This document shows, in pieces, positions 21,601-37,179 of a DNA stretch of 64,000 nt. Under the pieces are notes generated by a model. It was given only the letters and a program-made list of their open reading frames with translations, made no database searches and was not told where the DNA came from. The position numbers and the translations under genes are program-made. The stretch lies in the IMG/VR virus record IMGVR_UViG_3300009430_000004, positions 62,001-126,000 of that record; one strand, 5' to 3'. Within the stretch, counting starts at the first letter, position 1, and every line of letters begins with the position of its first letter.

Positions 21601-24600
21601 CTACACCCATTAGGGATTCTCCTATTGCAGGTCCCACTACTTTGAGGGTTTCACCGACTGCTTTAAAAGCGTCGCCTACCATACCAACTATTTGTCCAGG
21701 TAACTTAACAAGAGATATTACAGCAGTCTTAGCTATATTACCTAATTCAATAGCAAAGTTTTTAATTCCTTTGGCTATTGTAACAGGAACGCTAAGTATT
21801 GCCTTAGCAGCATCCTTTATACCTGTTCCTATTTTACCTATAAACTCACCAACTGTCCTAAGTTTTGCAACAAAGAACTCTTTAATGCTGTCTAAAGGTT
21901 TGTATAACATCTTTCTTACTCTGCCAAAGAACCCAACTCTGTCTTTGTTAGCTGGGTCAGCAGCACCATCATCTGAAGTATTAGCCATTTTCTGAACTGA
22001 TTTTCTGATTTTATTGATATTGCTACCAACACCGTTTAATTGTCCATTTACTTCAGAAGCTATATTTCTAACATCTGTTGCGATTCTAGCAAGAAGAGCA
22101 TCTTTACCCTTAGGTAATCCTTTGCTTATATTATTAACCAATCTATTGGAATCGTTAACTGGTCCAGTTGCTGAGCTTGCAGGAACTGACTGATGCCCAG
22201 CCGCTTCACGAATAGCATTGGCTTGTTTTGCAGGCACTACCATTTCACCTTGGTGAAGGTTAGCCTTATAATTATCATGAGGTACATTGTCTATACCAGA
22301 TGCATGTGAATGTTCTTCATCTTCTTCTTTGTCTTTATTCTTTCCGAACCCTAAAGCATCTTTTAATCCACTAAATTTTTCACCTATGTTATAAGTTAAT
22401 CTATCTGTTGGATTAGGTTCTGTTGCTTCATTATCTATGGTCGGAACTGGAGTATCTGAGCTTAATGTTAGCGTAGAGGATTTATGACCTGGGATTATCC
22501 TAGATGCTATTTTGTCTATTGCATTATTGATTGATTCTAAGAATCCCGATGTTCTACGCATTTCATTAGATATATCATTTTGAAGTATATCTCTATTCTC
22601 CTGAGAAACTGTTATAAGCTCTTCCATTCTATTATTAGTCTCTTCTTGAGCCTCAATGACTGGTGTAGCTCCAGCTTCTTCCTTTTTCTCCTCTTCGGTT
22701 TTAGGTTTAACTCCGAATAATTTAGCTAAAGTTGAATCTAGTGAACCACTTTCGATAGCTTTCCTAATCATCTTCTTCTGCTTCTTATCCAAAGATTTGA
22801 AGTCTACTGACCCACCTTCACCAAGCAATTGCTCTAGAGGAACTTTTGTCATATCTGATATTTTTCTAGCAATCTCTTCTTGTGGCATTCCTATCTTAGA
22901 CTTATTTTTACCTTCAAGATCAGGTCTGTAAATACGAGACACATCCACATCAAGATAATTACCATCTTTGTCTTTTAAGAAATTGTCATAATCATATTTT
23001 AACCCTAGGCTTCTATAGATATCTAAACGCTGTTTCTTAGCTTCGAGTAATGCTCTTTCTTTGGAGAAAGTTTCATCCTGCTCTTTATTCCTCTTAGCTA
23101 TTTGCTGCATTCTCTCACCATTAGGGTCTGCATAATCTGCCCCGTTTTCACCGTATCTTGCGGCATCACGGGTTTGTTTATTGAAATACATGTCATTCAG
23201 ACGCCCAAAGAATCCTTTACCTACTTTATTTCCGTCTTTATCTTTAGTAGAGAATAGACCAAGTTTTTCTCCTTTAGCTCGTCTTTCTTTGAAATTAAGT
23301 ATTCCACCTTCTTTAACAACATTTCCATTCTCATCAACAGTTTCTTTTCCATTCCAGCCTTGGTCTATCATGGAAGTTAAACCTCTTTGAGCATGTTTTT
23401 TAGTTAATCCTTGTGATAACATATTTAATCCTTTAAATGGAGCAGCTAATAGATTACCCATTATCTTCCCACTAAAATTAAGGATTTTTGAGAAGAAACC
23501 TTTTAATGGTTTCATAACCTTATCTTCCATAAACTTTCCAAACGGCATTCCAACATGTTTCTCAAATACATTTCCAATAAAACTAGTAAAGTTTTCCCAG
23601 CCCTTCTTAAACATATCTTTCATGTTAGTTACCATTATTGAGAATTCTTTCTTTAATGGTGCTATAGCATCAGCAAATGGATTTGCAATGCTCTTAGTGA
23701 ACCATTCTTTGATGTTGAGATTGATTTCTGAGAATTTAAGTTTAAGAGGTTCTTGGACTTCTAGTTTAAACCAGTTAGAGAATTTACCAATTAAACCACC
23801 TTGTCTCTTATTTGTCTTTTCATCAAACTCTCCAAATATAGCTTTTTTCCATTTCTCGGATGAAAGAGCAATACCAGCAGCCGCACCAAGTACAGCACCA
23901 CCAAGCGGACCTCCTGGAAGCATTAAAGCACCCATTATACCCAACTTGCTAGTTACTAACCCAAGGGCGGAACCCCCTATAATACCAGCTCCAACATTTC
24001 CAAGCAAATCTTTATTTTTATTGGTACTTCTAAATATCTTATTGAATATGCCACCATCTCGTTTTCCATCAGCACCTTTTTCACCAAATAGGAACTTTTG
24101 AACTGCTTCTGAACGATATAACATTGAACCTGCTATACCCATAACAGCTCCTCCTACAGGACCACCAGGAAGGAAGAATGATGGTAACATACCAAATCCT
24201 AATAATGGTTTCATAGCTCCTACAACAGCTCCACCAACCATACCAGCCTTATTCTTCTTGAAGAATTCTTGTGTAGACTTGCTTATAACTCCTCCTGTTC
24301 TCTCACCCATAGAATCTTTATCACCGAATAACCAGTTTTTAAATCTATCAGATTGAGTTAGAAAGCCTAAAGTTGAACCTACAATTGCTCCTCCAATAGG
24401 ACCGCCAGGTAATAGTAATGAACCCAATAATCCGAGCTTACCACCCATTAGTAAACCAGCACCACTTCCGATAATACCAAATGCTAATGATTTAGGTGCT
24501 CGTTCTTTTATCTTCTTTGTCATTTCATCAAATGCGATGTAATTATTATTCTTAGTACCGTCTTTGTTTTTCTTTGGACCAAACATGGCTTCACTAAAAT

Positions 24601-27526
24601 TAGTAAATCCATTCTTCAATGCATTGAATGCCCCAGTAAATACACCTTTCTGTAAATCAGGGTCATTAGCATTTTTATCACCAAAGAGATATATTTTTAA
24701 TGTATCCTTGAAACCACCAAATACTTTCTTCACTTCTCCAAATACACTATTTTCATTATCACCGAATGAAACTCCTGCTCTATTAGTATATCCTTTACCA
24801 GTAAAGTAATACTTAGCACCGTCCCATATATCGAGCATCTCATTGGCTGTATCAGACATTAAACCGCCTTCTCTAGCACCATTTTCACCAGTAGGTCTAC
24901 CAAAGATAAAGTCGGCAAGTTTTCCCATTTTCTTCTGTAAGGAAGTGTAAAAATCACTTTGTTTTATCTTAGTAAACATACCGTCTTTACCAAATAGAGC
25001 TTCTTTAGCAGGAAGGAATATATCGTTCTTTATCCAATTACCAAAGTCAGCAAATTTACCTTTAAGATTAGCAAGAGTTTGATCCATAAAAGATGAGCTT
25101 GGAGAGCCATCTTTGGATGCACCGAATACTATCTTAAACATAGCGGAGTCTATCTTATCAAATACACCTTTCATTAACTTAGCAGGTGTTTGTAAAATGT
25201 CGTCAACTTTCTCTCTTATCATGTTATATTTATCTTGAGCTCCACCTTTAAGGAACTTAGCGAACCATTTAGCAACAGTTTCCTGTTGATCTGGATTTTC
25301 TTGCTCGCTTTTCATTTTAGCATATGCTTCAGCATGTTCCCTGAGCTCTTTGTCTGATTTATCAGATAAATCAATAGATGAACCAAATACCCATTTACCA
25401 TCTTCCTCTTTCTTTCTTTTCTGTTCTTCGGATAACCTTTGAACAGCCTTGTTATATTTAGAGTTATTGGTAGCGTAGTCTGTTTCTTCTTTCTTCATCT
25501 TAGCAGTTCTTTCACGGATTCTATCTAACGGTGAAGGTGTCCCCCCTGAAGGTGTTGGGGGTGTTCCTGACCCATTCCCTGGAGATGTTGAGCTATCTCC
25601 ATTAGGAAACACAATGATGCCGTCAAGTAATATTTTCTTAATATCTCTTAAATAATCAAGAGTATTATGACCAAATTTATCAACAGCATTCATTCCAAAT
25701 CCTCGTCTAACCTCATATTTACCAGTCGTAGAATCACGCTTAATATGCTCATCAAAACCTGATGCCTGGAACGCAGACACACCATATTTATACTGGTTTT
25801 CTTCAGCCTCTGTCATAAATCTTTCGAGACCTTTTCTAGCATTAATATGAGAAGTACCAGCCATATCAAGTAATGTATTATTTGGTAATGACATTACTAT
25901 TTGTTTGAATAACCTCTGCATATCATTGCTCTTAAACTGATGAACATTCTTTAACTCATCAATAGTATTTCCTTCAGCATCCTTCTCATTAAAAGGATTT
26001 ACACCATAAGGTGTTTTAGCTAATTTAACGAAGAATTTATCTATATCTTCCCTAAATGCATCTCTATCCTTATTGTCTTCGATTAGGAATGCTTCAGAAC
26101 GAGTTTTAATTTCATCTATTACATCACTGAAGTTAGAAAGAATTGTTCTTTCTTGCTCCTTTTTGAATTCCTTTGACATTTCAAATACTGAACGGAATGA
26201 ACCTTTTTCATAGTCAAAGGCTTGCTCTTCCTTGCCAGATAAAGTGGCAAGTATCTTTCTCAAGTATGTTGGGATTACATCTGTGATGGCTTTCTTTGTG
26301 ACACCATCAAAGGGAACTGTCCCTTTCTTATATTGAGATAAATCAATAGATGTCTTAGTCTTAACATTTGCTCCAAATATTTGCCCTATGATTTGTAGAA
26401 ACGGATTATTAGAATTGAAAGCCAATCTATTAATCTTCATCAATAAAGCAGGGAAAAAATTTTGGAACGATTGATCCATATTTTCCATTGACTTCTTTAG
26501 GAAGCCAGGAATTAAAGATGCTACTATCTTGGTTGATATGAAACTAAGTGGTGATGCTGCCAAGAACTTCAATGTATCTGTATCTTCAAGCATTGATTTG
26601 ATTGGAGATAAGAACATGTTTGAGTCTATAGCATTACCAAGGTTTTTCTTCATCATATTCATGTAGCCTTTTACATTTAGACCACCCCTTGATAGTAACG
26701 CATTATCTAATGGATCTTCTTTAATTTTCTTTTCTTGTTCTTGGTCAACTCCCTTAGATGACACTGTTTGTAAATGTGTCAAAGTATCATTTAATACTTT
26801 AAGGTTTTCTTCATAGAATTTCAAAGAAGCTCCTATATATTTACCCATAGATTCACTTTGGAAATTGACCAAAAGACTTAAATTGGCATTCAGTGACTCC
26901 ATGCCTTGTACTATTGCGGAGCTAGTTTGTCTGTTTACAAGCAAAGCGTTTGATGAAAGTCCTATGTTAACATCATTAATAGACTGGGCAGCTTGTATAG
27001 TTGCCTGAGTTTGTCTTTCTAATGCTTTAACCATAGGATTATTTTTATTCATTGAAGGCTCTACTACATTGACAGTAGTGTTTTTATTAACAACTGGACT
27101 GGATATATCATCCATGGAATCTGATAGACTAAAGTCATCATTACCCATTTCAAAGTCTCCGTCCCCAAAGTCGAAATCGTCTAAGCCTTCGTTATAGATA
27201 GCTTCTTGTCGCTCTTTATTATAAATCTTACCAGACTTAATATCTTCAAGAGCATTTTTCAAAACATCCCTACCTATGCCTATTTGACTATTAGCATTTA
27301 TAGAATCTGTGACCCTTTTACCAATGGATCTAAAGTTTCTTATCTCTGTAAAGAGTTCGCTAACAGTATCTTCATTTGAGGTAACGAATTCCATTGATGC
27401 TGGCATCATCTCATTGACTAATTCTGTAGATGTATAGCCTAATGACTTACCAACATTCTTAAACCAATTTAAGGCTCCACTTGACTTAGTTGTAAGTGAA
27501 CCTTTATTCTTATTCTTTGTCGCCAT
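15605..27526 (-). CDS. Giant tape-measure-like tail protein with C39-like peptidase and lysozyme-like domains
   Basis: 3973 aa; Trp-periodic helical repeats; HASGIDNVPHDNYKANLHQGEMVVP motif typical of tape measure proteins; YYSQGDDRWG...GCGPTSMAMV...GHFVV...INDP (C39-like); HESGG...SIGIIQW (lysozyme-like). Confidence 0.8.
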   Translation of the reverse strand: MATKNKNKGSLTTKSSGALNWFKNVGKSLGYTSTELVNEMMPASMEFVTSNEDTVSELFTEIRNFRSIGKRVTDSINANSQIGIGRDVLKNALEDIKSGKIYNKERQEAIYNEGLDDFDFGDGDFEMGNDDFSLSDSMDDISSPVVNKNTTVNVVEPSMNKNNPMVKALERQTQATIQAAQSINDVNIGLSSNALLVNRQTSSAIVQGMESLNANLSLLVNFQSESMGKYIGASLKFYEENLKVLNDTLTHLQTVSSKGVDQEQEKKIKEDPLDNALLSRGGLNVKGYMNMMKKNLGNAIDSNMFLSPIKSMLEDTDTLKFLAASPLSFISTKIVASLIPGFLKKSMENMDQSFQNFFPALLMKINRLAFNSNNPFLQIIGQIFGANVKTKTSIDLSQYKKGTVPFDGVTKKAITDVIPTYLRKILATLSGKEEQAFDYEKGSFRSVFEMSKEFKKEQERTILSNFSDVIDEIKTRSEAFLIEDNKDRDAFREDIDKFFVKLAKTPYGVNPFNEKDAEGNTIDELKNVHQFKSNDMQRLFKQIVMSLPNNTLLDMAGTSHINARKGLERFMTEAEENQYKYGVSAFQASGFDEHIKRDSTTGKYEVRRGFGMNAVDKFGHNTLDYLRDIKKILLDGIIVFPNGDSSTSPGNGSGTPPTPSGGTPSPLDRIRERTAKMKKEETDYATNNSKYNKAVQRLSEEQKRKKEEDGKWVFGSSIDLSDKSDKELREHAEAYAKMKSEQENPDQQETVAKWFAKFLKGGAQDKYNMIREKVDDILQTPAKLMKGVFDKIDSAMFKIVFGASKDGSPSSSFMDQTLANLKGKFADFGNWIKNDIFLPAKEALFGKDGMFTKIKQSDFYTSLQKKMGKLADFIFGRPTGENGAREGGLMSDTANEMLDIWDGAKYYFTGKGYTNRAGVSFGDNENSVFGEVKKVFGGFKDTLKIYLFGDKNANDPDLQKGVFTGAFNALKNGFTNFSEAMFGPKKNKDGTKNNNYIAFDEMTKKIKERAPKSLAFGIIGSGAGLLMGGKLGLLGSLLLPGGPIGGAIVGSTLGFLTQSDRFKNWLFGDKDSMGERTGGVISKSTQEFFKKNKAGMVGGAVVGAMKPLLGFGMLPSFFLPGGPVGGAVMGIAGSMLYRSEAVQKFLFGEKGADGKRDGGIFNKIFRSTNKNKDLLGNVGAGIIGGSALGLVTSKLGIMGALMLPGGPLGGAVLGAAAGIALSSEKWKKAIFGEFDEKTNKRQGGLIGKFSNWFKLEVQEPLKLKFSEINLNIKEWFTKSIANPFADAIAPLKKEFSIMVTNMKDMFKKGWENFTSFIGNVFEKHVGMPFGKFMEDKVMKPLKGFFSKILNFSGKIMGNLLAAPFKGLNMLSQGLTKKHAQRGLTSMIDQGWNGKETVDENGNVVKEGGILNFKERRAKGEKLGLFSTKDKDGNKVGKGFFGRLNDMYFNKQTRDAARYGENGADYADPNGERMQQIAKRNKEQDETFSKERALLEAKKQRLDIYRSLGLKYDYDNFLKDKDGNYLDVDVSRIYRPDLEGKNKSKIGMPQEEIARKISDMTKVPLEQLLGEGGSVDFKSLDKKQKKMIRKAIESGSLDSTLAKLFGVKPKTEEEKKEEAGATPVIEAQEETNNRMEELITVSQENRDILQNDISNEMRRTSGFLESINNAIDKIASRIIPGHKSSTLTLSSDTPVPTIDNEATEPNPTDRLTYNIGEKFSGLKDALGFGKNKDKEEDEEHSHASGIDNVPHDNYKANLHQGEMVVPAKQANAIREAAGHQSVPASSATGPVNDSNRLVNNISKGLPKGKDALLARIATDVRNIASEVNGQLNGVGSNINKIRKSVQKMANTSDDGAADPANKDRVGFFGRVRKMLYKPLDSIKEFFVAKLRTVGEFIGKIGTGIKDAAKAILSVPVTIAKGIKNFAIELGNIAKTAVISLVKLPGQIVGMVGDAFKAVGETLKVVGPAIGESLMGVAKIFSGAMGAVKETMIGFGKGVGSLFFQLGKGTGELLVKFGKMTMGLVETVGNTIGKTFTIVTDFGLEMTKRTTDMLFAVGSNIADFTLKTITGVGEKLAEVGNTLWQIVTSPLKFLSQGLGKLLGIQEQKVVVVGGTLDVVREVQSIGTNRMAAPRSLETNTDSLVQSVRIVGSDVCLPVYLCPEKIVSSFEKIQPFAVRVDQSNGVLATALSPDSMKEAFNRITPLPVRIDTDMQGIERQSGFSVSSLVGGSSTAMVAPEFKNNNLAASVLAGMDKFDESNDKEEEAKKQNERLESEAAARQAHASRLTAANVQAANALKEEKQHERNWKDRILELLAGLGKDTRQHTTDWADIFGKKGLFMVGALTLLPLLKKAMEWLLGKGNDSRTDVGGTTIVNSDLVEHGTRAVGYGIKKASEHLMAPLKNSIQEFKKTFQGVKKVWDEVFPPIKKKGIEMWDDVSEKAHVVWDDIAEKSKGVWDNIAEKFTGTWDNIAKKFFPNIVEKGVNVADDAARATAKNKGPISKVVDKVKQFGNKGDVEAGEVIMETSNVSFVDEATEGTSKIAQAVNPANDVVKKAGGGKVVDFAAAKAAKESGEDVTKIAVDGADDVVDAVNKGRIEKFTKMAMDAVDNIARMFEKKFPKAAKAIGPAMDVLGKVLKKVKWVKYLPKVAKGLAKIAAAAATALASDAVWATWGAVTGGFEAAHLFKVDSDEVDWIMRAISSGMKALLNVSWFFVIEILNDICVEMTGVDFIQMMATQIYKAITSDEKGAKLEQAQADFKAEVDAYNEANGTKLSVDAYNDKVNKTVGQHIADGVSNTWKGIKAGASWVGDKTSKAWNATTGALSWAGNKIGEGAQWAGNKIAQGASVAWDATKKGAAWAGEKISQGAQWAGEKIQQGASVAWDATKKGAKMVWDNSALGGAVNAFKNDDMVKQNFNLKGDGKITTGMRAASGAAEALEKLSLGLLDAEKTAKTFYGIGLRFNDFMEGTKKFIGDNLVEPAKKAWTSAKEKINEKLEEFKKEASETWNGIKEGIGKQWNSAKETIGGALSAVGQYTSEKWEALKTNIGSAWDSAKTVVGEKLEAFKQNASETWDALKTNIGNAWSSAKETIGGKLEEFKANTSETWGNIKSNIGDAWGTAKGIIGEKLEAFKAEAGETWESIKSGVGKQWESAKSLIGTAAANIKDTAGNIWNSMPEPVKDRLGEAKETITTGAKKLADGAKELWGNIGDTISDKWKDIKKHLTEGLDRIGGFFKGIGNFFKNGFDSVKNFFTGRASDELDKLGWGEGGYGNVPVPDTKYNKSLNKRVPKVEGGGFGVESDTINNFAYYSQGDDRWGRYAYDHSPQFGTRSENPTLKARGCGPTSMAMVATQLTGKRYEPPQMADLAQKGGYSSSAGTSWGYFDKMASMFSLQKTEINPSSQRSQLQSMLDQHVPIILSGTRKHSADQSPFTSSGHFVVAVANDGPNGIVINDPRGPAYSKTYNLNTVLDEARKGWGFRYTGGSLPDPRNPEAYTPSSSPIGGTMENPTILDLFGKMSEAFSLYSENLYSGENKQLSWGDSFLTGSSSSDGYVGNFNIDFIPKNVQDAILKKTAELTVKHESGGKYTYGRNDVNASTGQRISPSIGIIQWRGGNAKAIMDRMLQEMPDNPEARYFASKNWNDSSPWSQSEQDRLEKYLASNMQVTKKVQDSFLLDHVKNRNLAPVYKYGVEPGKIKDPRSIAFLAEIANSGPALVKPFLERYSPTSATGKAEFQHFYNEFMSKSYWGPKSIYSNRLKSSFNSLVDWDPEQGGFGDRIVREPETILGGFGDMMCDITTKLTSSQRTSAPEKVQDVKGGFGDLTESITDTLNNALSGEGKIKSEGMRLPSFYEDPNPEVRSYMYGNSDIQKAGLSDDLLKTAIEVLRNIENNTGATSEGIKELNKKECVVNVITKSQTTTSIEGEDGEKPAGSTIVVAPPQTNNYINPIMGMANDRRNNKQQRDYQTAKGIAKGRTN
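17850..19150 (-). repeat. 11/22-residue Trp-periodic coding repeats within the tape-measure-like protein
   Basis: Examples: GAQWAGNKIAQGASVAWDATKKGAAWAGEKISQGAQWAGEKIQQGASVAWDATKK, and repeated KLEEFK..ASETW..IK..IG..W.SAK units. Boundaries approximate. Confidence 0.8.
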
Positions 27527-30228: not shown

Positions 30229-33200
30229 TTAATTCTTCATGTTTTTTATTTGCCTAACAGCAACTAATTTATCTCCTTCTACTTTACATGTTGGTTTGTT
30301 TGATGGTTTAATATAATGACCAACAACGGTAAGCTTATTATTCTTATCCAATATCGGACATACAATTTCACCCTCACTAAATTCTTTCTTAGTAAAATAG
30401 CTTGGATTATCATCTACATTCTTTGCTTTATAAAGATTGATTAATGTAGCTTCAAGCAATGCTCTTCCATCGTTTCCTCTATAATCTTTTCCACAGTCAG
30501 GGCATGTACCAGTTTCATTCCATGCTTCTTCATAACCTATGAGTGCTCCACAATGAACACATCTAGCCATGATATCTCCCATAGATTCTTTCACAGGCTC
30601 CCATGGTTTACCAGAATAGATTTCCTGTAACTTACGCTTCATTTCAACCAAAACCTTATTACCAAACATGGTAAGTAGTATAGATGGTGTCATACGAGCT
30701 AAGACAGCTCCAGGAGCTATAACTGAAGAAACTTCTTCCTGTGATCTAAACTCTGAGTAAGGTTCATAACCTTCAGGTATAACCTCACCAATGATTGACT
30801 TTAGTGCTGTAAAGAACGTTATCTTATCTCCAACACCTACAGTATCTTTATATTTAATATAGAACTCGATTAATACACCTTCTCCAACTTCTGTTCCTTT
30901 AATCTTACCGTCCTTAGCCTCTATTTTTCCAGTGGCATCATTTAACAGAACACCTGCTTTGAATACAGAGTCGGATTTATCGTATTTGTTAATAATCTTC
31001 TTTTTCTTATTTATTTTTTCATAGTAATCTGAAACTATCTTTCTTAATGTCGGTGAAAGTTCTTCTAGTTCTACTGTTGAATATATCTTTATATCTTCAA
31101 TGACACCTGAGTATTTTGATTTAATAGGTGTCTTACCAAGAGACTTAATCTCTTCCTTAAGTTCATTTCCTACAGAAGCTAGGAACTTATTCAATGAATC
31201 GTCATCGAATGATGTTTCAAACCTAATTAATTCATCACCAACTTGTACCTTCTGTCCAATATCAACTATATAATCAACATTGGCGTTTTTACCAAGGGAT
31301 ACTACTTTCTGCATAACTACATCAGCAGCCATATCATAGCTTAGCTTTTTAGTTACGAAGGTTGAGTCTTCATATGTTGAATAAGTTGATAAACATGCTA
31401 CTTTTTGTAATGAACCTATATTAAATCTATTTCCATCTAATGGTGATTCACTAAAGAAGTGTTTATCAGATGCAAGAATATCATTTTCCTTAAACTTCTG
31501 ACCTTTCTTTAAATTACATGATAGTTGATTTGATAGGAAGAATCCACCTGCACCATTCTTAACAACTCTTGGCTGTGTATCAATAGCTTGAACTGATCCA
31601 TCCTTATACTTAACCATTGCAATTCCAGCATCTTCGTTAACTTCTACAACTTCCCCATCCAACTTAGCTCTAACAATAAAGTCGTTAGAAAGATGGTAAT
31701 GGATTACTTGTTCAGATCCGTTTGAAATCAATACTGGTGATGATTTGGCTATAGGTATAATGTGTTTGGACTGTTTAGTAGCCATCGCTGTTCTAATAGA
31801 GTCGTCACGGGTAACCCCTAGAGGGGATAATAACTCGGCAGGAGAGAATAGATTAGCATCTGTAAGCTTCTCTAACCTATCATCATTTACTTCAATATAA
31901 CCTCTTGGACTTACAATGTTTGGTTCAAGGGATAACTGTCTAACAACACCACAGTTTGCATCTGGAGAGGTTGATATAGATAGAATTCCCATCATAGTTG
32001 GGTCGTAAGAACGTTTGTCCTGAGTATAAGCTTCTGGAAGGTTCATACCTACATGACCCTTTGGAGTTATTGCTCGGGACTTTTCAAGTTCAACGATAGG
32101 ATTTAATATACTATAATCCTCAACAGTCTGTAATGTTAACAGTTTCTTCAACACTATATCCTGAGGTACTGAAATCTTAACTGGATTGTTATTGTACGCT
32201 GTAATTCTATATTGAGAATAAGCGTCAGCTATCTGTTTATATAGAATAGCATTCACTATTTCATTTGAACGCACTCTGTAGATATTCATATTATTTTCTT
32301 TGATTGATGAATTATCTGCAAGCAGAGAATTCGCAAATAATATTAAGCTAACGAAATCTGTAGGATAATTTAAATCCTCAAGAACTTCTTTAGTTATAGG
32401 GTCTATCATAAAGTCATAGAAGTTGTCAAATGCGTTACCTATCATCTTATTATTAAACATGATTTCGAAGATTGATAAGTATGCATCTTTACCATCAAAG
32501 TCGGCATAATCAAATGCTTTAGTTGGTATATCTGCGAAGGCATTTAGTAACAATGAATTCTCATAAGGATATTTGTCATATACAAGATATCCATCAGCGA
32601 ATTGTACAACACCTTCATTATTTGATACTTTAGGACGAGTGTCACTAAAGTGATGTCTTATATTTGCTTTTCTTAGTACACTGGTTATACCTTCAACATA
32701 ACCTAATAGCAATAATACAGGAACATTCTTGCTCATGATTGTTGCCTTAGTGTACATAAACTTCTTACCAGCAGTTGCAGAATCAAAATCCTCTACAAGT
32801 TTACCTTGGTCGCATGATAAGATAAAGTCTATAATATCCATTCCACCCATCATCTGAGTATTCAAGTCCATCAATATAGGTTCATTATTATTAAGGAAGA
32901 AACCTATACAGAAGTCGTTTTCTGTGAGTCTGTATTTTTTAGTATCAATTCTTGCCCGAACTTCATCCTGATTGAAAACAAACTCCGCATTATTAACCTT
33001 TATAATGCTATAAATCTTTGATAACTCGTCATATTCGAGTATAGACTTATATTTTGAGTTAGCAGCTAAGTTGTTACCATACTTAACCTTAACATTACTA
33101 CTTGGATTCAACAATGCTTTCTTAAACTTCTCAATCTTAGATGAAACCTTAGTACCAAATCTCCTAATAAACATCTTGTTGTAATTACTACAAACTTGAA

Positions 33201-34704
33201 CTTCATCAGGTCCAGTTTTAACTACGGGTTTCATGAAGAGTTGTTTTACGATAAGCTTTTTATTTCCACCAAGATACATAAATTTGTCATCTATAAACTT
33301 AGGCACATCAAATCGTAATCTGTGACGTACTCTATTGGCATCTTCAAGGTCAACTATATAAGTTTCCTTGAAGTTCATTTCATCTGAGCTGTCCACAACT
33401 TCGATATTTCTAACATAAACAGGTATTGACTTATCGTTAAGGGAAGTAATTATATTAACTAAATCCTTCTTAGATAAGGTTTCGTTATATGCTTTTTCAA
33501 AGTGTGGATATTTAATAGTTGTCATATTCTTATTGGTTGTTGTAACCTTATTCGATACATCAATTGATGGAATAGCGATTGATTTAGTATCCATCTTTTG
33601 AATTTCCTCAAGAGTCATTCTCTCAAGCTTTATTTTCCTCTGTTTTTCACGAAGTTCCTGGTCTCTCTTTATAGATAGAGTTGAACGACCTGTTTTTTGA
33701 CTTTGGTTAATATCATATACTTTCTTCAGAAGCTGTTGGTCAACAATCAGCTTATCTTCAAGCTTTTTCTTAATATCGTCAGCATCATCTTTAATATTAA
33801 CCTTCTCTTCTTCCATGACATCTTCAAGTCTATCCTTAACACTTTCTTCAAGCTCAGGACTTTCCTCTTCGTTTCCAGTGAACTTGTACGTTTCAATGAA
33901 TTTTGCAGCAACATCATTGAATATCTCGTATCTCTTAGCATCTTCCTCTATTTGTTTTTCATCATCCAATGCTGAAAGGTCAGCATGTATTTTTGAAATT
34001 TCTCTACGGAAGGCTGTGAATGATTTATCATCACATTGAGCAGGATTAACTCTCATCATTGAGTCATTATTATAGAAGACTATGTTGACATCCCCTAATT
34101 CCTTAAATTTGTCGAAGTATTTATACATCGCAAAATAAAGAAGTAGAACAGGATTATCAAAATTTAATCTCCTATTCTCAGCAGCTCTCTTTAATCCAGC
34201 TATCCTCCAGTCATCCATTCCTACAACGATTGTTTTTATTTTATAACCGTCCAATCGAGGATCATTAATGATATTCTTGAGATAATCAATATACCCTTTT
34301 GTTTTTAAGTCATATTTTAGCTTTCTGGCAAAATCAAAATATATAGTATTGTAAGTAGCTAGGTCAAAATACACATTCCTTTCATTAAGATTACTTATTG
34401 AAGGGACAGTATTTAGGAATTTAATTCCTGACTCTAGCTCACCATATATCGCTTCTCTCTCTTTTCTGTAGATTTTCCTATATGTCTTATTAGCTAACTT
34501 ACCTTTATAAATAGAGTCCATATAATAGAAATGGAACTTATTATTGTGATAAAGGTTTTTGTTTTCTATAAGACGCATAGAAGCATCCAGAGAACCGTTA
34601 TTGATGAATACAATACTATACATACTTTGAGCTTTTTGATCTACAGGCAATTGTGCCTTTTGTTTAAACACTTTCAAGTGCGGAATATCCGAAATAAAAA
34701 TCAT
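30229..34704 (-). CDS. rpoB: Multisubunit RNA polymerase beta-like subunit (probably virion RNAP) with long N-terminal extension and C-terminal Zn ribbon/SET-like appendage
   Basis: STSPDANCGVVRQL, RTAMATKQSKH, TYEDSTFV, VGDKITFFTALKSIIGEV and PGAVLARMT correspond to bacterial beta motifs (ETPEG.NIG, RALMGANMQRQ, NFEDS, GDKMAGRHGNKG, PLGVPSRMN). Late-type promoter at 34738-34749. Confidence 0.9.
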   Translation of the reverse strand: MIFISDIPHLKVFKQKAQLPVDQKAQSMYSIVFINNGSLDASMRLIENKNLYHNNKFHFYYMDSIYKGKLANKTYRKIYRKEREAIYGELESGIKFLNTVPSISNLNERNVYFDLATYNTIYFDFARKLKYDLKTKGYIDYLKNIINDPRLDGYKIKTIVVGMDDWRIAGLKRAAENRRLNFDNPVLLLYFAMYKYFDKFKELGDVNIVFYNNDSMMRVNPAQCDDKSFTAFRREISKIHADLSALDDEKQIEEDAKRYEIFNDVAAKFIETYKFTGNEEESPELEESVKDRLEDVMEEEKVNIKDDADDIKKKLEDKLIVDQQLLKKVYDINQSQKTGRSTLSIKRDQELREKQRKIKLERMTLEEIQKMDTKSIAIPSIDVSNKVTTTNKNMTTIKYPHFEKAYNETLSKKDLVNIITSLNDKSIPVYVRNIEVVDSSDEMNFKETYIVDLEDANRVRHRLRFDVPKFIDDKFMYLGGNKKLIVKQLFMKPVVKTGPDEVQVCSNYNKMFIRRFGTKVSSKIEKFKKALLNPSSNVKVKYGNNLAANSKYKSILEYDELSKIYSIIKVNNAEFVFNQDEVRARIDTKKYRLTENDFCIGFFLNNNEPILMDLNTQMMGGMDIIDFILSCDQGKLVEDFDSATAGKKFMYTKATIMSKNVPVLLLLGYVEGITSVLRKANIRHHFSDTRPKVSNNEGVVQFADGYLVYDKYPYENSLLLNAFADIPTKAFDYADFDGKDAYLSIFEIMFNNKMIGNAFDNFYDFMIDPITKEVLEDLNYPTDFVSLILFANSLLADNSSIKENNMNIYRVRSNEIVNAILYKQIADAYSQYRITAYNNNPVKISVPQDIVLKKLLTLQTVEDYSILNPIVELEKSRAITPKGHVGMNLPEAYTQDKRSYDPTMMGILSISTSPDANCGVVRQLSLEPNIVSPRGYIEVNDDRLEKLTDANLFSPAELLSPLGVTRDDSIRTAMATKQSKHIIPIAKSSPVLISNGSEQVIHYHLSNDFIVRAKLDGEVVEVNEDAGIAMVKYKDGSVQAIDTQPRVVKNGAGGFFLSNQLSCNLKKGQKFKENDILASDKHFFSESPLDGNRFNIGSLQKVACLSTYSTYEDSTFVTKKLSYDMAADVVMQKVVSLGKNANVDYIVDIGQKVQVGDELIRFETSFDDDSLNKFLASVGNELKEEIKSLGKTPIKSKYSGVIEDIKIYSTVELEELSPTLRKIVSDYYEKINKKKKIINKYDKSDSVFKAGVLLNDATGKIEAKDGKIKGTEVGEGVLIEFYIKYKDTVGVGDKITFFTALKSIIGEVIPEGYEPYSEFRSQEEVSSVIAPGAVLARMTPSILLTMFGNKVLVEMKRKLQEIYSGKPWEPVKESMGDIMARCVHCGALIGYEEAWNETGTCPDCGKDYRGNDGRALLEATLINLYKAKNVDDNPSYFTKKEFSEGEIVCPILDKNNKLTVVGHYIKPSNKPTCKVEGDKLVAVRQIKNMKN

Positions 34705-34763
34705 TTTCGATCACCCTTTCTCATAATAGTCTAGTATTATAAGAATGTTAGTGATCGAAAACG
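34702..34763 (-). promoter_or_regulatory. RBS/start-codon-sequestering hairpin containing a late-type promoter, upstream of RNAP beta
   Basis: mRNA cguuuucgaucac...gugaucgaaaaUG and uucuuauaaua/uauuaugagaa arms; AACA-TTCTTA-TA at 34749-34738 lies in the 5' arm. Confidence 0.75.
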
Positions 34764-34922
34764 TTATATACCCTACGAGTGTATGTGTTACAAAATCCCT
34801 CAACTTGGAAGCCTTACCCCCAAGTACATCTTGGGAAAAATCGCAAATTTGTTATCATAGAGCGTTGTCTCAGCACCCGTCATCTATGACCTCCTGGTTA
34901 CTTCTAAAAAGGTTTTCACCAT
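34764..34922 (-). ncRNA. Putative structured small RNA or leader (contains a possible 27-codon sORF at 34800..34883)
   Basis: Follows promoter 34923-34934; GC-richer than its flanks; stems ucauaga/ucuauga and acuugg/ccaagu. Confidence 0.4.
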
Positions 34923-35122
34923 TAATTTAATGTTTGTCCATATATCTTTTTAAACTTTAATTTTTGAGCTAACATGTGTATAATAAAGAAAACCGTAAAC
35001 TTGAGATAATTAAGTATATATTATTAATGTGTATAGCACCAGATAATAGATAAGCTGTACGTAATATATACACTTATATTTCATGTGGGTAAACAACAAA
35101 CAAAATTTAGGAGGAATAAACC

Positions 35123-35374
35123 ATGGAAAAATCAATAAAAAATTATTTCGGAATCGGTGTTAGAAAAGGTGTTAAGTTAGAAAGTCAAGGATTAGTTGAC
35201 TTAAGTATATTAGCTGAGCTTAAGATTAGAAAAGGAACAAACAAAACTCTCATAGCAAAGCAAATGCAACAAGGTGAGAACATAGAGAAATATATAAACA
35301 ATGTAAAACAGACTTTGTTAGATTTAGGCGTACAAGAAAAAGACATTTTAGGAATCTACAATTTCTTAGCGTAG
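35123..35374 (+). CDS. Hypothetical early protein
   Basis: 83 aa; SD AGGAGG; early-type promoter at 35015-35024; terminator near 35405-35440. Confidence 0.65.
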   Translation: MEKSIKNYFGIGVRKGVKLESQGLVDLSILAELKIRKGTNKTLIAKQMQQGENIEKYINNVKQTLLDLGVQEKDILGIYNFLA

Positions 35375-35492
35375 CAAGTTTCTTTAATTTGTCCCATAGA
35401 ATAAAAATAGGGTTCGATTCGTCGAGCCTTATTTTTTTTATATTTATATATTATTTATAGGTATAGTAATACGTATTAAAGGAGGTAATTAT

Positions 35493-36302
35493 ATGACTAT
35501 CAAACTAGATAGAATAGTTTGTCAACAGAGAATAACAAGAAAAAGGCACATATGGTGGCAATATACTATTGCTGATGACAAAATATATTTGAGAACTATA
35601 AAAGGTGGATATCCGAAGTTCGGAGAATTATTCATCGCATTAATGAGAGATGTACCGTTTTGTAGACATTATTTTTCCGAGGATTTTATAGTAGATAAAT
35701 ATATTACTCTAGAATCAGGAATATTTGGTACAGGTGGTAAGAAGGATGTCACACATCATCTATGGGCGTATATAGATCAAGATGATGAAGATATTAATGT
35801 GATAAACTTGTCAGATGAATATGAATTTAAAGAACCTTTAATATATCCTATAGACAAGTTAATCCAGATATTCAATATGTTGTATTCGGATTATATTGAC
35901 GAATATATAATACAAGATAAACGCTATTATAAATTAAATACTGTTGAGCTATATGACAAGAATTGGTATAAACGAAGTTATAGTGAATTATTTGTTAGAT
36001 TTAATAAGATGGATGAAGAAAAGCTCCCATATATTTTATCTAAACATTTTGGAGGATTTACTAAGAAAGATTCCAAATTAGAAGTATTTAATTATAATAT
36101 GTGCACTATGTGGGATAAGAAGGATGAGAGAGGTATTAAATACCGTGATGTTATAAAGAAGAAGTTTGGTGGATTACTTAGTAGTTTCTATATAGTATAC
36201 TATGCAGATGGGTGTACTATTGATACAACACGGGTAGAAGATAAATTCCTTAAAAAGTTATTAGGGGAGTTTACTAATAAAAATGAGCAAATTAAAAAAT
36301 AA
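35493..36302 (+). CDS. Hypothetical early protein
   Basis: 269 aa; SD AAGGAGGT; early-type promoter at 35445-35454. Confidence 0.65.
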   Translation: MTIKLDRIVCQQRITRKRHIWWQYTIADDKIYLRTIKGGYPKFGELFIALMRDVPFCRHYFSEDFIVDKYITLESGIFGTGGKKDVTHHLWAYIDQDDEDINVINLSDEYEFKEPLIYPIDKLIQIFNMLYSDYIDEYIIQDKRYYKLNTVELYDKNWYKRSYSELFVRFNKMDEEKLPYILSKHFGGFTKKDSKLEVFNYNMCTMWDKKDERGIKYRDVIKKKFGGLLSSFYIVYYADGCTIDTTRVEDKFLKKLLGEFTNKNEQIKK

Positions 36303-36322
36303 TATGGACAAACAATATAATA

Positions 36323-36575
36323 GATGGGGGACCGTACAATTTTTGTACTTGCCTACTTCCAACAAAAATTAGATTAAGGATTGTGGTTTAAACCACATAA
36401 TTCCTTGCTCTACAGTTGGGGGTAGGGGGACCGTACCGCTAGGTAATAGTTAAGACAGTCTCGAAGAGACTGAGTAGTAAAGGACAAGTGCCAGACGAGA
36501 GCTATAATATAGAGAAAAAAATAAAAAGAAGAAAATATAATTAAGAGTATATACCAAAAAAAGGTATATACTCAT
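36323..36575 (+). ncRNA. Putative structured non-coding RNA
   Basis: No long ORF and GC-richer; promoter 36311-36322; long hairpin 36352-36426; hairpin cagtctc-gaa-gagactg; 12-nt direct repeat GGGGGACCGTAC; terminator 36545-36578. Confidence 0.55.
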
Positions 36576-36597
36576 TTTAATTTATCTTAAAAAGGAG

Positions 36598-37179
36598 ATG
36601 AAATTATTAATGGATAATAAAATAGTTAGTATAGGTTCAGTTAATAAAAATTCAAGAGACTCTAAGTTTAAGAGACATATACAAAGTAATTTTACTCAGG
36701 ACAATCTAAAAAGAGAGATTGAAAATATGGCATCATTTATTAACTATGATCCTAAATTACTACTTAGTGTGAAGGAAGAAGTTGATAGATATTTTGAATC
36801 AGGTTCATTCTATAATTCAGTCTTTCAAGAGATTTCTGATGGAATTGGTACTAATGACTGTAGATTAGTAACTGACCCATTTGGAACTAAAATGTTTATA
36901 TATAAGATAGAAATCAAGTTAATAATAGGTATGTCAGATGTAGTTAGACATAATAGATTTCTTATAGATGCTATTGCTAAATATGCATTCAGAACTTATA
37001 AGAATGAAGGTTATAAGCAATATTTACTAGATGTATTTGAGACGCAAAACATGGGAATACAATTCATGGAAATTTATATACAAGATAAAGATATTTATAT
37101 GGGAGGAGAGATTAAATTACTTAAAGGTGAATTGTACGATAAGATGTATCACTATTATGAATTATTAGGTGACCAATAG
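36598..37179 (+). CDS. Hypothetical protein
   Basis: 193 aa; first gene of a tightly packed + strand cluster. Confidence 0.55.
   Translation: MKLLMDNKIVSIGSVNKNSRDSKFKRHIQSNFTQDNLKREIENMASFINYDPKLLLSVKEEVDRYFESGSFYNSVFQEISDGIGTNDCRLVTDPFGTKMFIYKIEIKLIIGMSDVVRHNRFLIDAIAKYAFRTYKNEGYKQYLLDVFETQNMGIQFMEIYIQDKDIYMGGEIKLLKGELYDKMYHYYELLGDQ

What the first reader, a model, noticed from the sequence alone, without database searches (positions are those of the whole stretch)
34800..36436. The two candidate RNAs form a divergent matched pair
Seen: both start behind the identical 13-mer ATATGGACAAACA (minus strand 34931-34943, plus strand 36302-36314). This makes an inverted repeat that encloses a 1.36-kb block of two early genes at the point where gene orientation switches. 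Both transcripts also contain the same two words, UUGGGGGUA and CUUCCAA, paired with each other but in opposite order. Inference: co-regulated RNAs bound by one protein, or able to cross-pair as a two-piece RNA. Alternatives are a bidirectional replication-priming origin or the ends of an inserted or invertible cassette.
Basis: partly seen in the sequence, partly recalled or inferred. Interest (0 to 1): 0.65.

Follow-up and report, generated by a model that had tools for sequence, protein, structure and literature searches.

The report
Divergent late promoters driving noncoding RNAs
The repeated 13-mer marks two back-to-back late promoters of an uncultivated AR9-like jumbo phage. Each drives an unusually long structured noncoding transcript; the left one is a conserved RNA family next to the virion RNA polymerase gene, and nothing shows that the two RNAs act as a pair.

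Summary
The 13-mer lies at 34931-34943(-) and 36302-36314(+) and nowhere else in the 218-kb phage genome. Both downstream stretches fold well and hold the two named words, paired as described.

The last four bases of the 13-mer (AACA), with N6-TA downstream, form the late-promoter consensus of Bacillus phage AR9's non-virion RNA polymerase. That motif is enriched in noncoding DNA here, and the genome encodes a homolog of gp226, the polymerase subunit that confers promoter recognition in AR9. So both RNAs are late transcripts, with predicted starts at 34923(-) and 36322(+). The enclosed genes carry AR9-type early promoters.

The left RNA (about 215-235 nt) is a new conserved RNA family. It occurs once per genome, upstream of the virion RNA polymerase beta gene, in four phage lineages, and its main hairpin shows compensatory base changes. 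The polymerase gene has its own proximal promoter.

The right RNA (about 260 nt, ending at a terminator) has no detectable sequence homolog, only positional analogs.

The "matched pair" idea is weak. The extra 9-base identity is matched or exceeded by 3 other pairs among 63,546 site pairs. The shared 9-mer is expected in 36% of random segment pairs. Cofolding gives no gain over shuffles. Inversion is unsupported. An origin of replication is not excluded.

The parts
34931..34943 (-). Left copy of the 13-mer. Its last four bases (34934-34931) are the AACA element (-11 to -8) of a distal late promoter; T(-1) is at 34924 and the predicted start is A at 34923.
34690..34923 (-). Left noncoding RNA, about 215-235 nt, running from the predicted start at 34923 to the hairpin and U-rich stretch at the polymerase gene start.
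   Evidence: Fold z -4.65. Homologs in L005, L007, L018, L028, L045 and L049. L005 and L007 carry their own terminators.
34890..34896 (-). Invariant single-stranded CAGGAGG (a perfect Shine-Dalgarno-like word), about 30 nt from the 5' end and 6 nt before an AUG/GUG.
34854..34890 (-). P1 hairpin, the conserved core of the left RNA family.
   Evidence: 13 pairs, 100% of cells paired, 7 pairs with compensatory changes, 0 of 500 shuffles as good. Model R1 scores 73-78 bits.
34803..34825 (-). P3 hairpin formed by the words UUGGGGGUA and CUUCCAA. Relatives keep a hairpin here, but its sequence varies.
34770..34782 (-). P4, a small conserved motif (ACACUCGUA-G/U-R-GU) shared with the L007 and L018 clades.
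34705..34761 (-). Long hairpin whose 3' arm holds the polymerase gene's Shine-Dalgarno sequence. It contains a proximal late promoter (AACA 34749-34746, predicted start 34738) and is followed by U-rich first codons. It probably ends the left RNA.
   Evidence: The terminator role is inferred; the terminator scan did not list it.
30229..34704 (-). 1491-aa homolog of the AR9 g189 virion RNA polymerase beta subunit.
35015..35031 (+). AR9-type early promoter (TATATATTAT-N6-G) in front of the 83-aa gene 35123-35374. The terminator is at 35403-35436.
35445..35461 (+). Second early promoter, in front of the 269-aa gene 35493-36302.
   Evidence: Homologs of the gene in G003 and G004.
36302..36314 (+). 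Right copy of the 13-mer. AACA lies at 36311-36314, T(-1) at 36321 and the predicted start (A) at 36322. It overlaps the stop codon of the 269-aa gene.
36322..36583 (+). Right noncoding transcript, about 260 nt. It is also the 3' untranslated stretch of the early operon and the leader of the genes from 36598/36610 onward.
   Evidence: Fold z -5.9. No sense ORF of 20 aa or more starts after the predicted start at 36322; the one sense ORF listed (29 aa, 36283-36372) begins upstream, inside the 269-aa gene. No sequence homolog.
36326..36337 (+). First copy of the 12-nt direct repeat GGGGGACCGTAC. The second copy is at 36425-36436. The repeat is unique to this RNA in the genome.
36352..36426 (+). 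Long hairpin closed by a 12-bp stem that includes CUUCCAA and UUGGGGGUA. Its two G-U pairs favour RNA-level pairing on this strand.
   Evidence: versus 84
36545..36573 (+). Intrinsic terminator-like hairpin (11 bp, 7-nt loop) with a weak U tail.

Best explanation
The window comes from a 218-kb uncultivated jumbo phage of the AR9/PBS1 group, probably with a Bacillota host. Like AR9, it uses two promoter classes.

The 3' end of the 13-mer is the -11 to -8 AACA element of two divergent late promoters (AACA-N6-TA, with +1 at the final A) read by the phage's non-virion RNA polymerase. Each promoter starts a long, structured, terminator-bounded noncoding transcript: left 34923 to about 34690 on the minus strand, right 36322 to about 36583 on the plus strand. 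Two early genes with their own early promoters lie between them. The RNAs are therefore co-regulated simply because they share a promoter class. The extra 9 identical bases upstream are probably a local promoter duplication or chance.

The left RNA is a real, conserved RNA. The virion polymerase beta gene is made from its own proximal late promoter inside that terminal hairpin. Transcripts reading through from the distal promoter would have the ribosome-binding site masked.

Inferred function, at low confidence: a late leader-type small RNA whose 5' Shine-Dalgarno word binds 30S subunits and stabilises the RNA, as STAB-SD does, and which modulates polymerase mRNA isoforms.

The right transcript is most simply the shared untranslated stretch between the early operon and four downstream genes. 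Its internal late promoter would keep those genes expressed late by reading through a weak terminator.
For: Promoter class:
- The AR9 late consensus is AACA-(6N)-TA/G with +1 at the last base. The AR9 early consensus is AAATATATATTAT-(6N)-G (PMC5312081; PMC7598289).
- AACA-N6-TA occurs 214 times, 69 of them in the 8% of the genome that is noncoding. Scrambled controls give 20-29 noncoding hits. Most sites lie 15-40 nt before a ribosome-binding site.
- TATATATTAT occurs 49 times, 44 of them noncoding and 29 with G at +7.
- A homolog of gp226, the subunit that confers promoter recognition on AR9's non-virion polymerase, lies at G000:37511-38812 (E 8e-21).
- The polymerase gene matches AR9 g189, a late virion polymerase gene. 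AR9 g189 itself has AACA-N6-TA upstream.

Left RNA:
- All left-RNA homologs start behind AACA-N6-TA followed by ATG.
- P1 covaries, and the model hits once per genome.
- L005 and L007 have their own terminators after the RNA, and proximal promoters lie before the polymerase gene in the window, L005, L007 and L018.

Right RNA:
- A terminator follows at 36545-36573.
- Apart from one poor-consensus antisense early-like word at 36504-36513 (minus strand), no other early or late motif lies between 36322 and 36610.

The STAB-SD principle is described in PMC4113751. 5'UTR-derived small RNAs conserved upstream of structural genes in giant phages are described in PMC11512511.
Against: - There are no expression data.
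- Whether this phage has uracil DNA, which AR9's polymerase needs, is unknown.
- The left terminal hairpin was not called a terminator by the scan.
- The function of the left RNA is inferred only. Its conserved loops and P4 are not explained by a stabiliser role. In L005 it is uncoupled from the polymerase gene by 1.7 kb.
- The right RNA's strong fold and its unique 12-nt direct repeat are not explained by a passive spacer.
- Positional analogs with G-rich words in G001, G003 and G004 hint at a function of its own.
Confidence: 0.72

Rival explanations
1. Functionally matched RNA pair. The same helix (UUGGGGG paired with CUUCCAA, including tandem G-U pairs) is displayed by both RNAs and bound by one phage or host protein, or the two RNAs exchange strands to form a two-piece RNA.
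For: - Both words occur in both RNAs and pair as stated.
- TTGGGGGTA is unique to these two sites.
- The promoters are 25 of 31 identical.
- These are the two longest late leaders in the genome and they are adjacent.
- In G003 and G004, two neighbouring late-promoter units at the analogous place carry a 17-nt complementarity with one compensatory change, so RNA-RNA pairing at this locus has some precedent.
Against: - The cofold gain is below that of shuffled partners.
- The intramolecular stems (10 and 12 bp) are longer than any swapped duplex (8-9 bp, read from the sequence).
- 36% of random segment pairs share a 9-mer.
- The helix sequence is not kept in the left-RNA homologs of relatives. 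L005 has GGGA/UCCC, and the L018 clade has an AU-rich hairpin.
- The transcribed parts show no significant similarity.
Confidence: 0.1
2. Bidirectional origin of replication. The two divergent phage-polymerase transcripts form R-loops, or are processed into primers, for leading-strand synthesis in both directions, as at the T7 primary origin or T4 oriF/oriG.
For: - The global minimum of cumulative GC skew lies at G000 96955 (window 34955), 12 bases outside the left 13-mer.
- The corresponding minima lie at the same locus in G001 (124800) and G003 (174414).
- The AT-skew minimum coincides in G000 and G001.
- 65-77% of genes point away from this point.
- Both RNAs are noncoding and carry G runs that are rare in these AT-rich genomes.
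Against: - Coding-strand skew is strongly positive whatever the gene's orientation (0.12-0.25). The difference between co-oriented and counter-oriented genes is small and inconsistent at third codon positions, so the minimum mostly reflects gene orientation.
- No iterons or other direct-repeat arrays were found.
- The two promoters are separated by 0.4 to 4.5 kb of variable early genes in different lineages.
- P1 covariation shows selection on the RNA fold rather than on hybrid formation.
- AR9 itself has no such RNA at g189.
Confidence: 0.12
3. The 13-mers are the ends of an inserted or invertible cassette, that is, recombination sites flanking the two early genes.
For: An inverted repeat of 13 of 13 (25 of 31) bases flanks a 1.36-kb block. 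The gene content of the block differs between relatives.
Against: - Neither enclosed protein nor its neighbours match a recombinase, invertase, transposase or homing endonuclease.
- The repeat coincides base for base with two promoters, from -30 to +1.
- The 269-aa gene has the same orientation relative to the polymerase gene in G003 and G004.
- Relatives have early genes at the same place without any such repeat.
- Reads to test inversion were not available.
Confidence: 0.03

Closest known systems
AR9 late promoters read by the non-virion RNA polymerase (Lavysh et al. 2017, PMC5312081; Sokolova et al. 2017, PMC5449584)
   Same: Same motif and spacing (AACA-N6-TA/G, start at the last base). 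The same companion early motif (TATATATTAT-N6-G). A gp226 homolog is present. The gene downstream on the left is the homolog of a late AR9 gene.
   Different: The phage is only about 36-38% identical to AR9 in the polymerase beta protein. AR9 has a short leader and no RNA at g189. Uracil DNA and real transcription starts are untested here.
5'UTR-derived small RNAs of giant phages, such as 201phi2-1 sRNA005 and the phiKZ sRNA upstream of gp182 (PMC11512511)
   Same: A short structured transcript made by termination just upstream of a late structural gene, with its position and fold conserved across related jumbo phages.
   Different: A different phage group (phiKZ-like, Pseudomonas), a different gene (tail protein) and no sequence relation. 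Those were seen by RNA sequencing; this one is only predicted.
STAB-SD 5' mRNA stabiliser of Bacillus thuringiensis cry3A (Agaisse and Lereclus 1996; reviewed in PMC4113751)
   Same: A perfect Shine-Dalgarno-like word near the 5' end of a long leader in a Bacillota setting, far from the gene's own ribosome-binding site.
   Different: Here a start codon follows at the canonical distance and lies inside a conserved hairpin. Stabilisation is untested. In two lineages the RNA is a separate transcription unit.
Transcript-primed phage origins (T7 primary origin; T4 oriF/oriG)
   Same: Phage-polymerase promoters with noncoding transcripts at a point from which genes and strand skew diverge.
   Different: No unwinding element or iterons were identified. 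The promoters are separated by genes. The evidence is compositional only.

Membership tests
AR9-type late (non-virion RNA polymerase) promoter | Sequence AACA-(6N)-T-A/G with the start at the last base | tested here: met
   Left: AACA 34934-34931, TA 34924-34923. Right: AACA 36311-36314, TA 36321-36322. Consensus taken from PMC5312081.
AR9-type late (non-virion RNA polymerase) promoter | The motif is over-represented upstream of genes in the same genome | tested here: met
   69 of 214 sites fall in the 8% noncoding DNA, against 20-29 for scrambled controls. The median distance to the next start codon is about 30 nt. The same holds in G001 and G003.
AR9-type late (non-virion RNA polymerase) promoter | The genome encodes the promoter-recognition subunit (gp226 family) | tested here: met
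   G000:37511-38812, E 7.9e-21, 25% identity over residues 17-439 of 464. Also present in G001, G003 and G004.
AR9-type late (non-virion RNA polymerase) promoter | Transcripts start at the predicted base, late in infection | not testable with these tools
AR9-type late (non-virion RNA polymerase) promoter | Deoxyuridine in the template strand, as the AR9 enzyme requires | not testable with these tools
   Base modification cannot be read from the sequence.
Conserved structured RNA family (left RNA) | Homologs in several lineages with compensatory base-pair changes | tested here: met
   Five distinct sequences from four lineages. 13 pairs, 100% paired, 7 with changes on both sides, 0 of 500 shuffles as good; slid controls give 23-59% paired.
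Conserved structured RNA family (left RNA) | Membership of a described Rfam family | tested here: not met
   No hit at gathering score in the window or the relatives' loci. The best E-value in the region is 2.4-6.
Same RNA family for the right RNA (paralog of the left) | Match to the left-RNA covariance model, or significant alignment | tested here: not met
   Model R1 does not hit 36300-36600. Alignment z is 0.4-1.9.
Invertible DNA segment | A recombinase gene in or beside the segment, and both orientations observed | tested here: not met
   No recombinase-like family was found in the enclosed proteins or their neighbours. Orientation is conserved in G003 and G004. Read-level inversion could not be tested.
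Replication origin | Strand-composition switch not explained by gene orientation; iterons or an unwinding element | tested here: inconclusive
   The skew minimum lies at the locus in 3 of 3 genomes, but the coding-strand effect dominates and no iterons were found.

The most novel reading that the evidence does not exclude
The locus is the replication origin of this clade of AR9-like jumbo phages. Two divergent transcripts made by the phage's own late polymerase, one of them a conserved structured RNA, serve as processed primers or R-loop formers for bidirectional replication. On this reading the conserved folds control primer formation, much as RNA II folding does at ColE1.
Probability: 0.1. 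Interest if true: 0.8.

Novelty: new member of a known kind. Interest (0 to 1): 0.45.

Why it matters
- It extends the unusual AR9 transcription scheme (template-strand late promoters and AT-rich early promoters) to a clade of uncultivated jumbo phages that share only about 36% identity with AR9 in the virion polymerase.
- It defines a new covariation-supported RNA family, absent from Rfam, tied to the virion RNA polymerase beta gene.
- It shows a compact design in which a hairpin ends one transcript, hides the ribosome-binding site of read-through RNA, and carries the promoter for the translatable mRNA.
- It marks the locus as the main divergence point of genes and strand skew in three genomes. 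That makes it the first place to look for an origin of replication in this phage group, where none is known to me.

Tried and rejected
- **Rfam:** gathering and E-value modes on the window and the relatives' loci gave nothing for either RNA. A weak RT-17 hit (19 bits, gathering score 40) was dismissed. No tRNA or tmRNA was found.
- **Phage collection:** megablast of the region gave no match.
- **Right-RNA homologs:** searched with nhmmer and blastn on loci, BLAST on four whole relatives (only A-rich low-complexity hits), protein anchors, a motif scan of IMG/VR (only the G001 site plus unrelated coding hits) and pairwise alignment against positional analogs. None was significant.
- **Closer relatives of this phage:** left-RNA patterns were used in IMG/VR and in the metagenome collection. 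These added members of the L018 clade only.
- **Cross-pairing:** no support.
- **Partial inverted duplication:** the idea that the right RNA is a partial inverted duplicate of the left, with collinear blocks, is not significant.
- **Leader peptide:** the short ORF after CAGGAGG is 9 codons in three lineages, 27 here and over 40 in L007. The differences between L018 and L028 are compensatory in the stem, so it was rejected as a conserved peptide.
- **Listeria phage LPJP1:** its 1-kb gap before the polymerase gene has a late-type promoter, but the fold is not significant (z -1.5) and the model does not hit it. Staphylococcus phage MarsHill and AR9 have no comparable RNA.
- **269-aa protein:** Pfam, PHROGs and the Atlas gave no lead.
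Full report
**1. Setting**

The window is G000:C1:62001-126000 of a 218,088-bp viral contig with 33.5% G+C. The 1491-aa ORF at 30229-34704(-) matches phage multisubunit RNA polymerase beta families. By tblastn it is 35-38% identical to proteins of Listeria phage LPJP1, Staphylococcus jumbo phages and Bacillus phages PBS1 and AR9. The AR9 match is g189, annotated as a virion RNA polymerase beta subunit. Uncultivated relatives with 34-61% identity were fetched.

**2. The observation**

The 13-mer occurs exactly twice in the whole genome, at the stated coordinates and in inverted orientation. TTGGGGGTA also occurs only at 34815-34823(-) and 36416-36424(+). CTTCCAA accompanies it in both places.

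In the predicted folds the two words pair with each other. On the left they form a local hairpin. On the right they close a long hairpin, in the opposite order. Both stretches fold far better than shuffles (z -4.65; -5.6 to -5.9), and the sense strands fold 10-12 kcal/mol better than the antisense strands. No convincing ORF lies on the sense strand.

**3. What the 13-mer is**

The inverted repeat is really 31 nt with 25 matches. It runs from -30 to +1 of a motif that AR9 work defines as the late promoter of the non-virion RNA polymerase: AACA-(6N)-TA/G, with transcription starting at the last base (PMC5312081; PMC7598289). Several results show that this genome uses that promoter class.

- AACA-N6-TA occurs 214 times, and 69 of those fall in the 8% of the genome that is noncoding. 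Scrambled controls give 20-29.
- Most sites lie 15-40 nt before a ribosome-binding site.
- The genome encodes a homolog of gp226, the subunit that confers promoter recognition on AR9's non-virion polymerase (E 8e-21).
- The AR9 early motif is also used. TATATATTAT occurs 49 times, 44 of them noncoding and 29 followed by G after six bases. Two copies precede the two enclosed genes, at 35015 and 35445.

The predicted starts are 34923(-) and 36322(+).

**4. How special the identity is**

Only the 9 bases upstream of AACA are unexplained by the promoter core.

- Among 63,546 pairs of sites, four share 9 or more such bases.
- Among 3,321 pairs of noncoding sites, four reach 25 of 31 identity.
- 36% of random genome segment pairs of these lengths share some 9-mer.
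- The upstream part is not conserved at the left-RNA promoters of relatives.

What does stand out is that these two promoters have the longest uninterrupted leaders in the genome (219 and 276 nt against a median of about 30), and they are neighbours.

**5. The left RNA**

Homologs were found in L005, L007, L018, L028, L045 and L049, which represent four lineages. All begin behind AACA-N6-TA followed by ATG. They share these features:

- an invariant single-stranded CAGGAGG;
- a hairpin P1, in which all 13 pairs are kept in all five distinct sequences and 7 pairs show compensatory changes (0 of 500 shuffles as good; slid registers give 23-59% paired);
- a conserved UA(A/U)CAAA;
- a small conserved motif P4, present in three lineages.

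A covariance model of P1 hits exactly once in each of G000, G001, G003 and G004 and in the L005 locus, at 73-78 bits. It does not hit the right RNA, AR9 or LPJP1. Rfam has no such family.

In L005 and L007 the RNA ends at its own strong terminator, and the polymerase gene has a separate proximal late promoter. In the window and the L018 clade the RNA runs into a long hairpin whose 3' arm contains the polymerase gene's ribosome-binding site. The loop side of that hairpin contains the proximal promoter (window AACA 34749-34746, start 34738), and U-rich first codons follow it.

I infer that the left RNA is a stand-alone late transcript of about 215-235 nt, that the polymerase mRNA starts at the proximal promoter, and that read-through RNA is translationally masked. 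The terminator function is an inference.

**6. The right RNA**

From 36322 it runs through a GUAC hairpin and a long hairpin closed by a 12-bp stem (36352-36426). It then passes a second copy of a 12-nt repeat that is unique to this RNA, a further hairpin and a purine-rich tract, and reaches a terminator-like hairpin at 36545-36573. The only other early or late motif before the next gene at 36598/36610 is a poor-consensus antisense early-like word at 36504-36513. That gene and the three after it must therefore depend on read-through.

No sequence homolog was found by any route. Positional analogs do exist.

- In G001, a late promoter right after a single divergent early gene drives a 305-nt structured leader (z -8.2).
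- In G003 and G004, right after the homolog of the 269-aa gene, lie two tandem late-promoter noncoding units. Their G-rich and C-rich words pair over 17 nt with one compensatory change.
- A G-rich word of the form GGG-N-GUA(A)G-N-GGG occurs in G001 only at that locus, and in G003 only at that locus on both strands (that is, the word and its complement). I defined this pattern after seeing the sequences, so it is a hint only.

**7.

- *Cross-pairing.* The heterodimer gains 4.7 kcal/mol over the monomers, less than the shuffled-partner mean of 8.9.
- *Common origin of the two RNAs.* Not shown.
- *One protein binding the shared helix.* Not testable here. The helix sequence is not conserved in the left-RNA family, which argues against it.
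- *Invertible or inserted cassette.* No recombinase-like protein was found, the repeat coincides with the promoters, and the orientation is kept in G003 and G004.
- *Origin.* The global minimum of cumulative GC skew lies at window 34955, and at the same locus in G001 and G003. However, coding strands are G-rich whichever way genes point, and the residual difference between co-oriented and counter-oriented genes is small. No iterons were found. An origin is therefore not excluded, but it is not shown either.

**8. Comparison with known systems**

The promoters fit the AR9 late class on three tested criteria. Start-site mapping and uracil content could not be tested. The left RNA resembles the 5'UTR-derived small RNAs reported upstream of a tail gene in phiKZ-like phages (PMC11512511). 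Its 5' Shine-Dalgarno word resembles the STAB-SD stabiliser (PMC4113751). Both are analogies of mechanism, not family membership.

**9. Limits**

All starts, ends and timing are predicted. No stretch was taken for human, and nothing was withheld for that reason.

**10. Verdict**

This is a real but largely explained feature. It consists of two late promoters with long noncoding transcripts around an early gene block. One transcript belongs to a new conserved RNA family. The "matched pair" reading is weakly founded. Interest is moderate.

Noticed in passing
window 34705-34761 (-), with L005:3104-3186 and L018:5993-6072: A long hairpin just before the polymerase start codon pairs the ribosome-binding site with the flank of an embedded proximal late promoter (CAC-Y-AACA-N6-TA). 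The U-rich first codons (MIFI...) follow like a terminator tail. The arms differ between lineages, yet each one folds.
   Followed up: partly
L018:860-1532 (-) and L056:2362-3000 (+): In G003 and G004, two tandem noncoding units behind late-type promoters lie downstream of the homolog of the 269-aa early gene. A 17-nt C-rich word in the second unit pairs with two G-rich words in the first, with one G-C to A-U swap between the two phages. This could be a genuine two-piece or long-range-closed RNA.
   Followed up: partly
L007:4957-5267 (-): G001 has a second long late leader (305 nt, fold z -8.2), divergent from its left-RNA homolog, with a single early gene between them. This is the same layout as in the window.
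   Followed up: partly
G000 96955 (window 34955); G001 124800; G003 174414: The global minimum of cumulative GC skew falls at this locus in all three genomes, and the AT-skew minimum does so in two of them. The signal is largely, though perhaps not wholly, explained by gene orientation.
   Followed up: partly
whole genome; for example window 28559, 28639, 29198, 38601, 41166: The AR9-type early promoter word TATATATTAT (then N6-G) occurs 49 times, 44 of them in noncoding DNA. This gives a ready map of early transcription units.
   Followed up: partly
G000:37511-38812 (outside the window): A homolog of AR9 gp226, the promoter-specificity subunit of the non-virion RNA polymerase. G003 has two copies.
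   Followed up: no
L018:8965-9310: A group I intron (Rfam RF00028, 61 bits) lies at the end of the polymerase beta ORF of a relative. This recalls the introns of AR9 g189. The window's gene is uninterrupted.
   Followed up: no
L038:1613-2665 (Listeria phage LPJP1, MZ422438.1): A 1-kb unannotated gap lies before the virion polymerase beta homolog. It has an AACA-N6-TA site at about 1826-1837, twin GGGACUC words and a double G6 run. Its fold is not significant, and it is not related to the left RNA by the model.
   Followed up: partly
window 15605-27526 (-): A 3973-aa ORF lies among virion-protein genes. It was not examined.
   Followed up: no
window 36504-36513 (-): A one-mismatch copy of the early promoter word lies antisense inside the right RNA. 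It is followed by C rather than G after six bases, so it is probably not functional.
   Followed up: no
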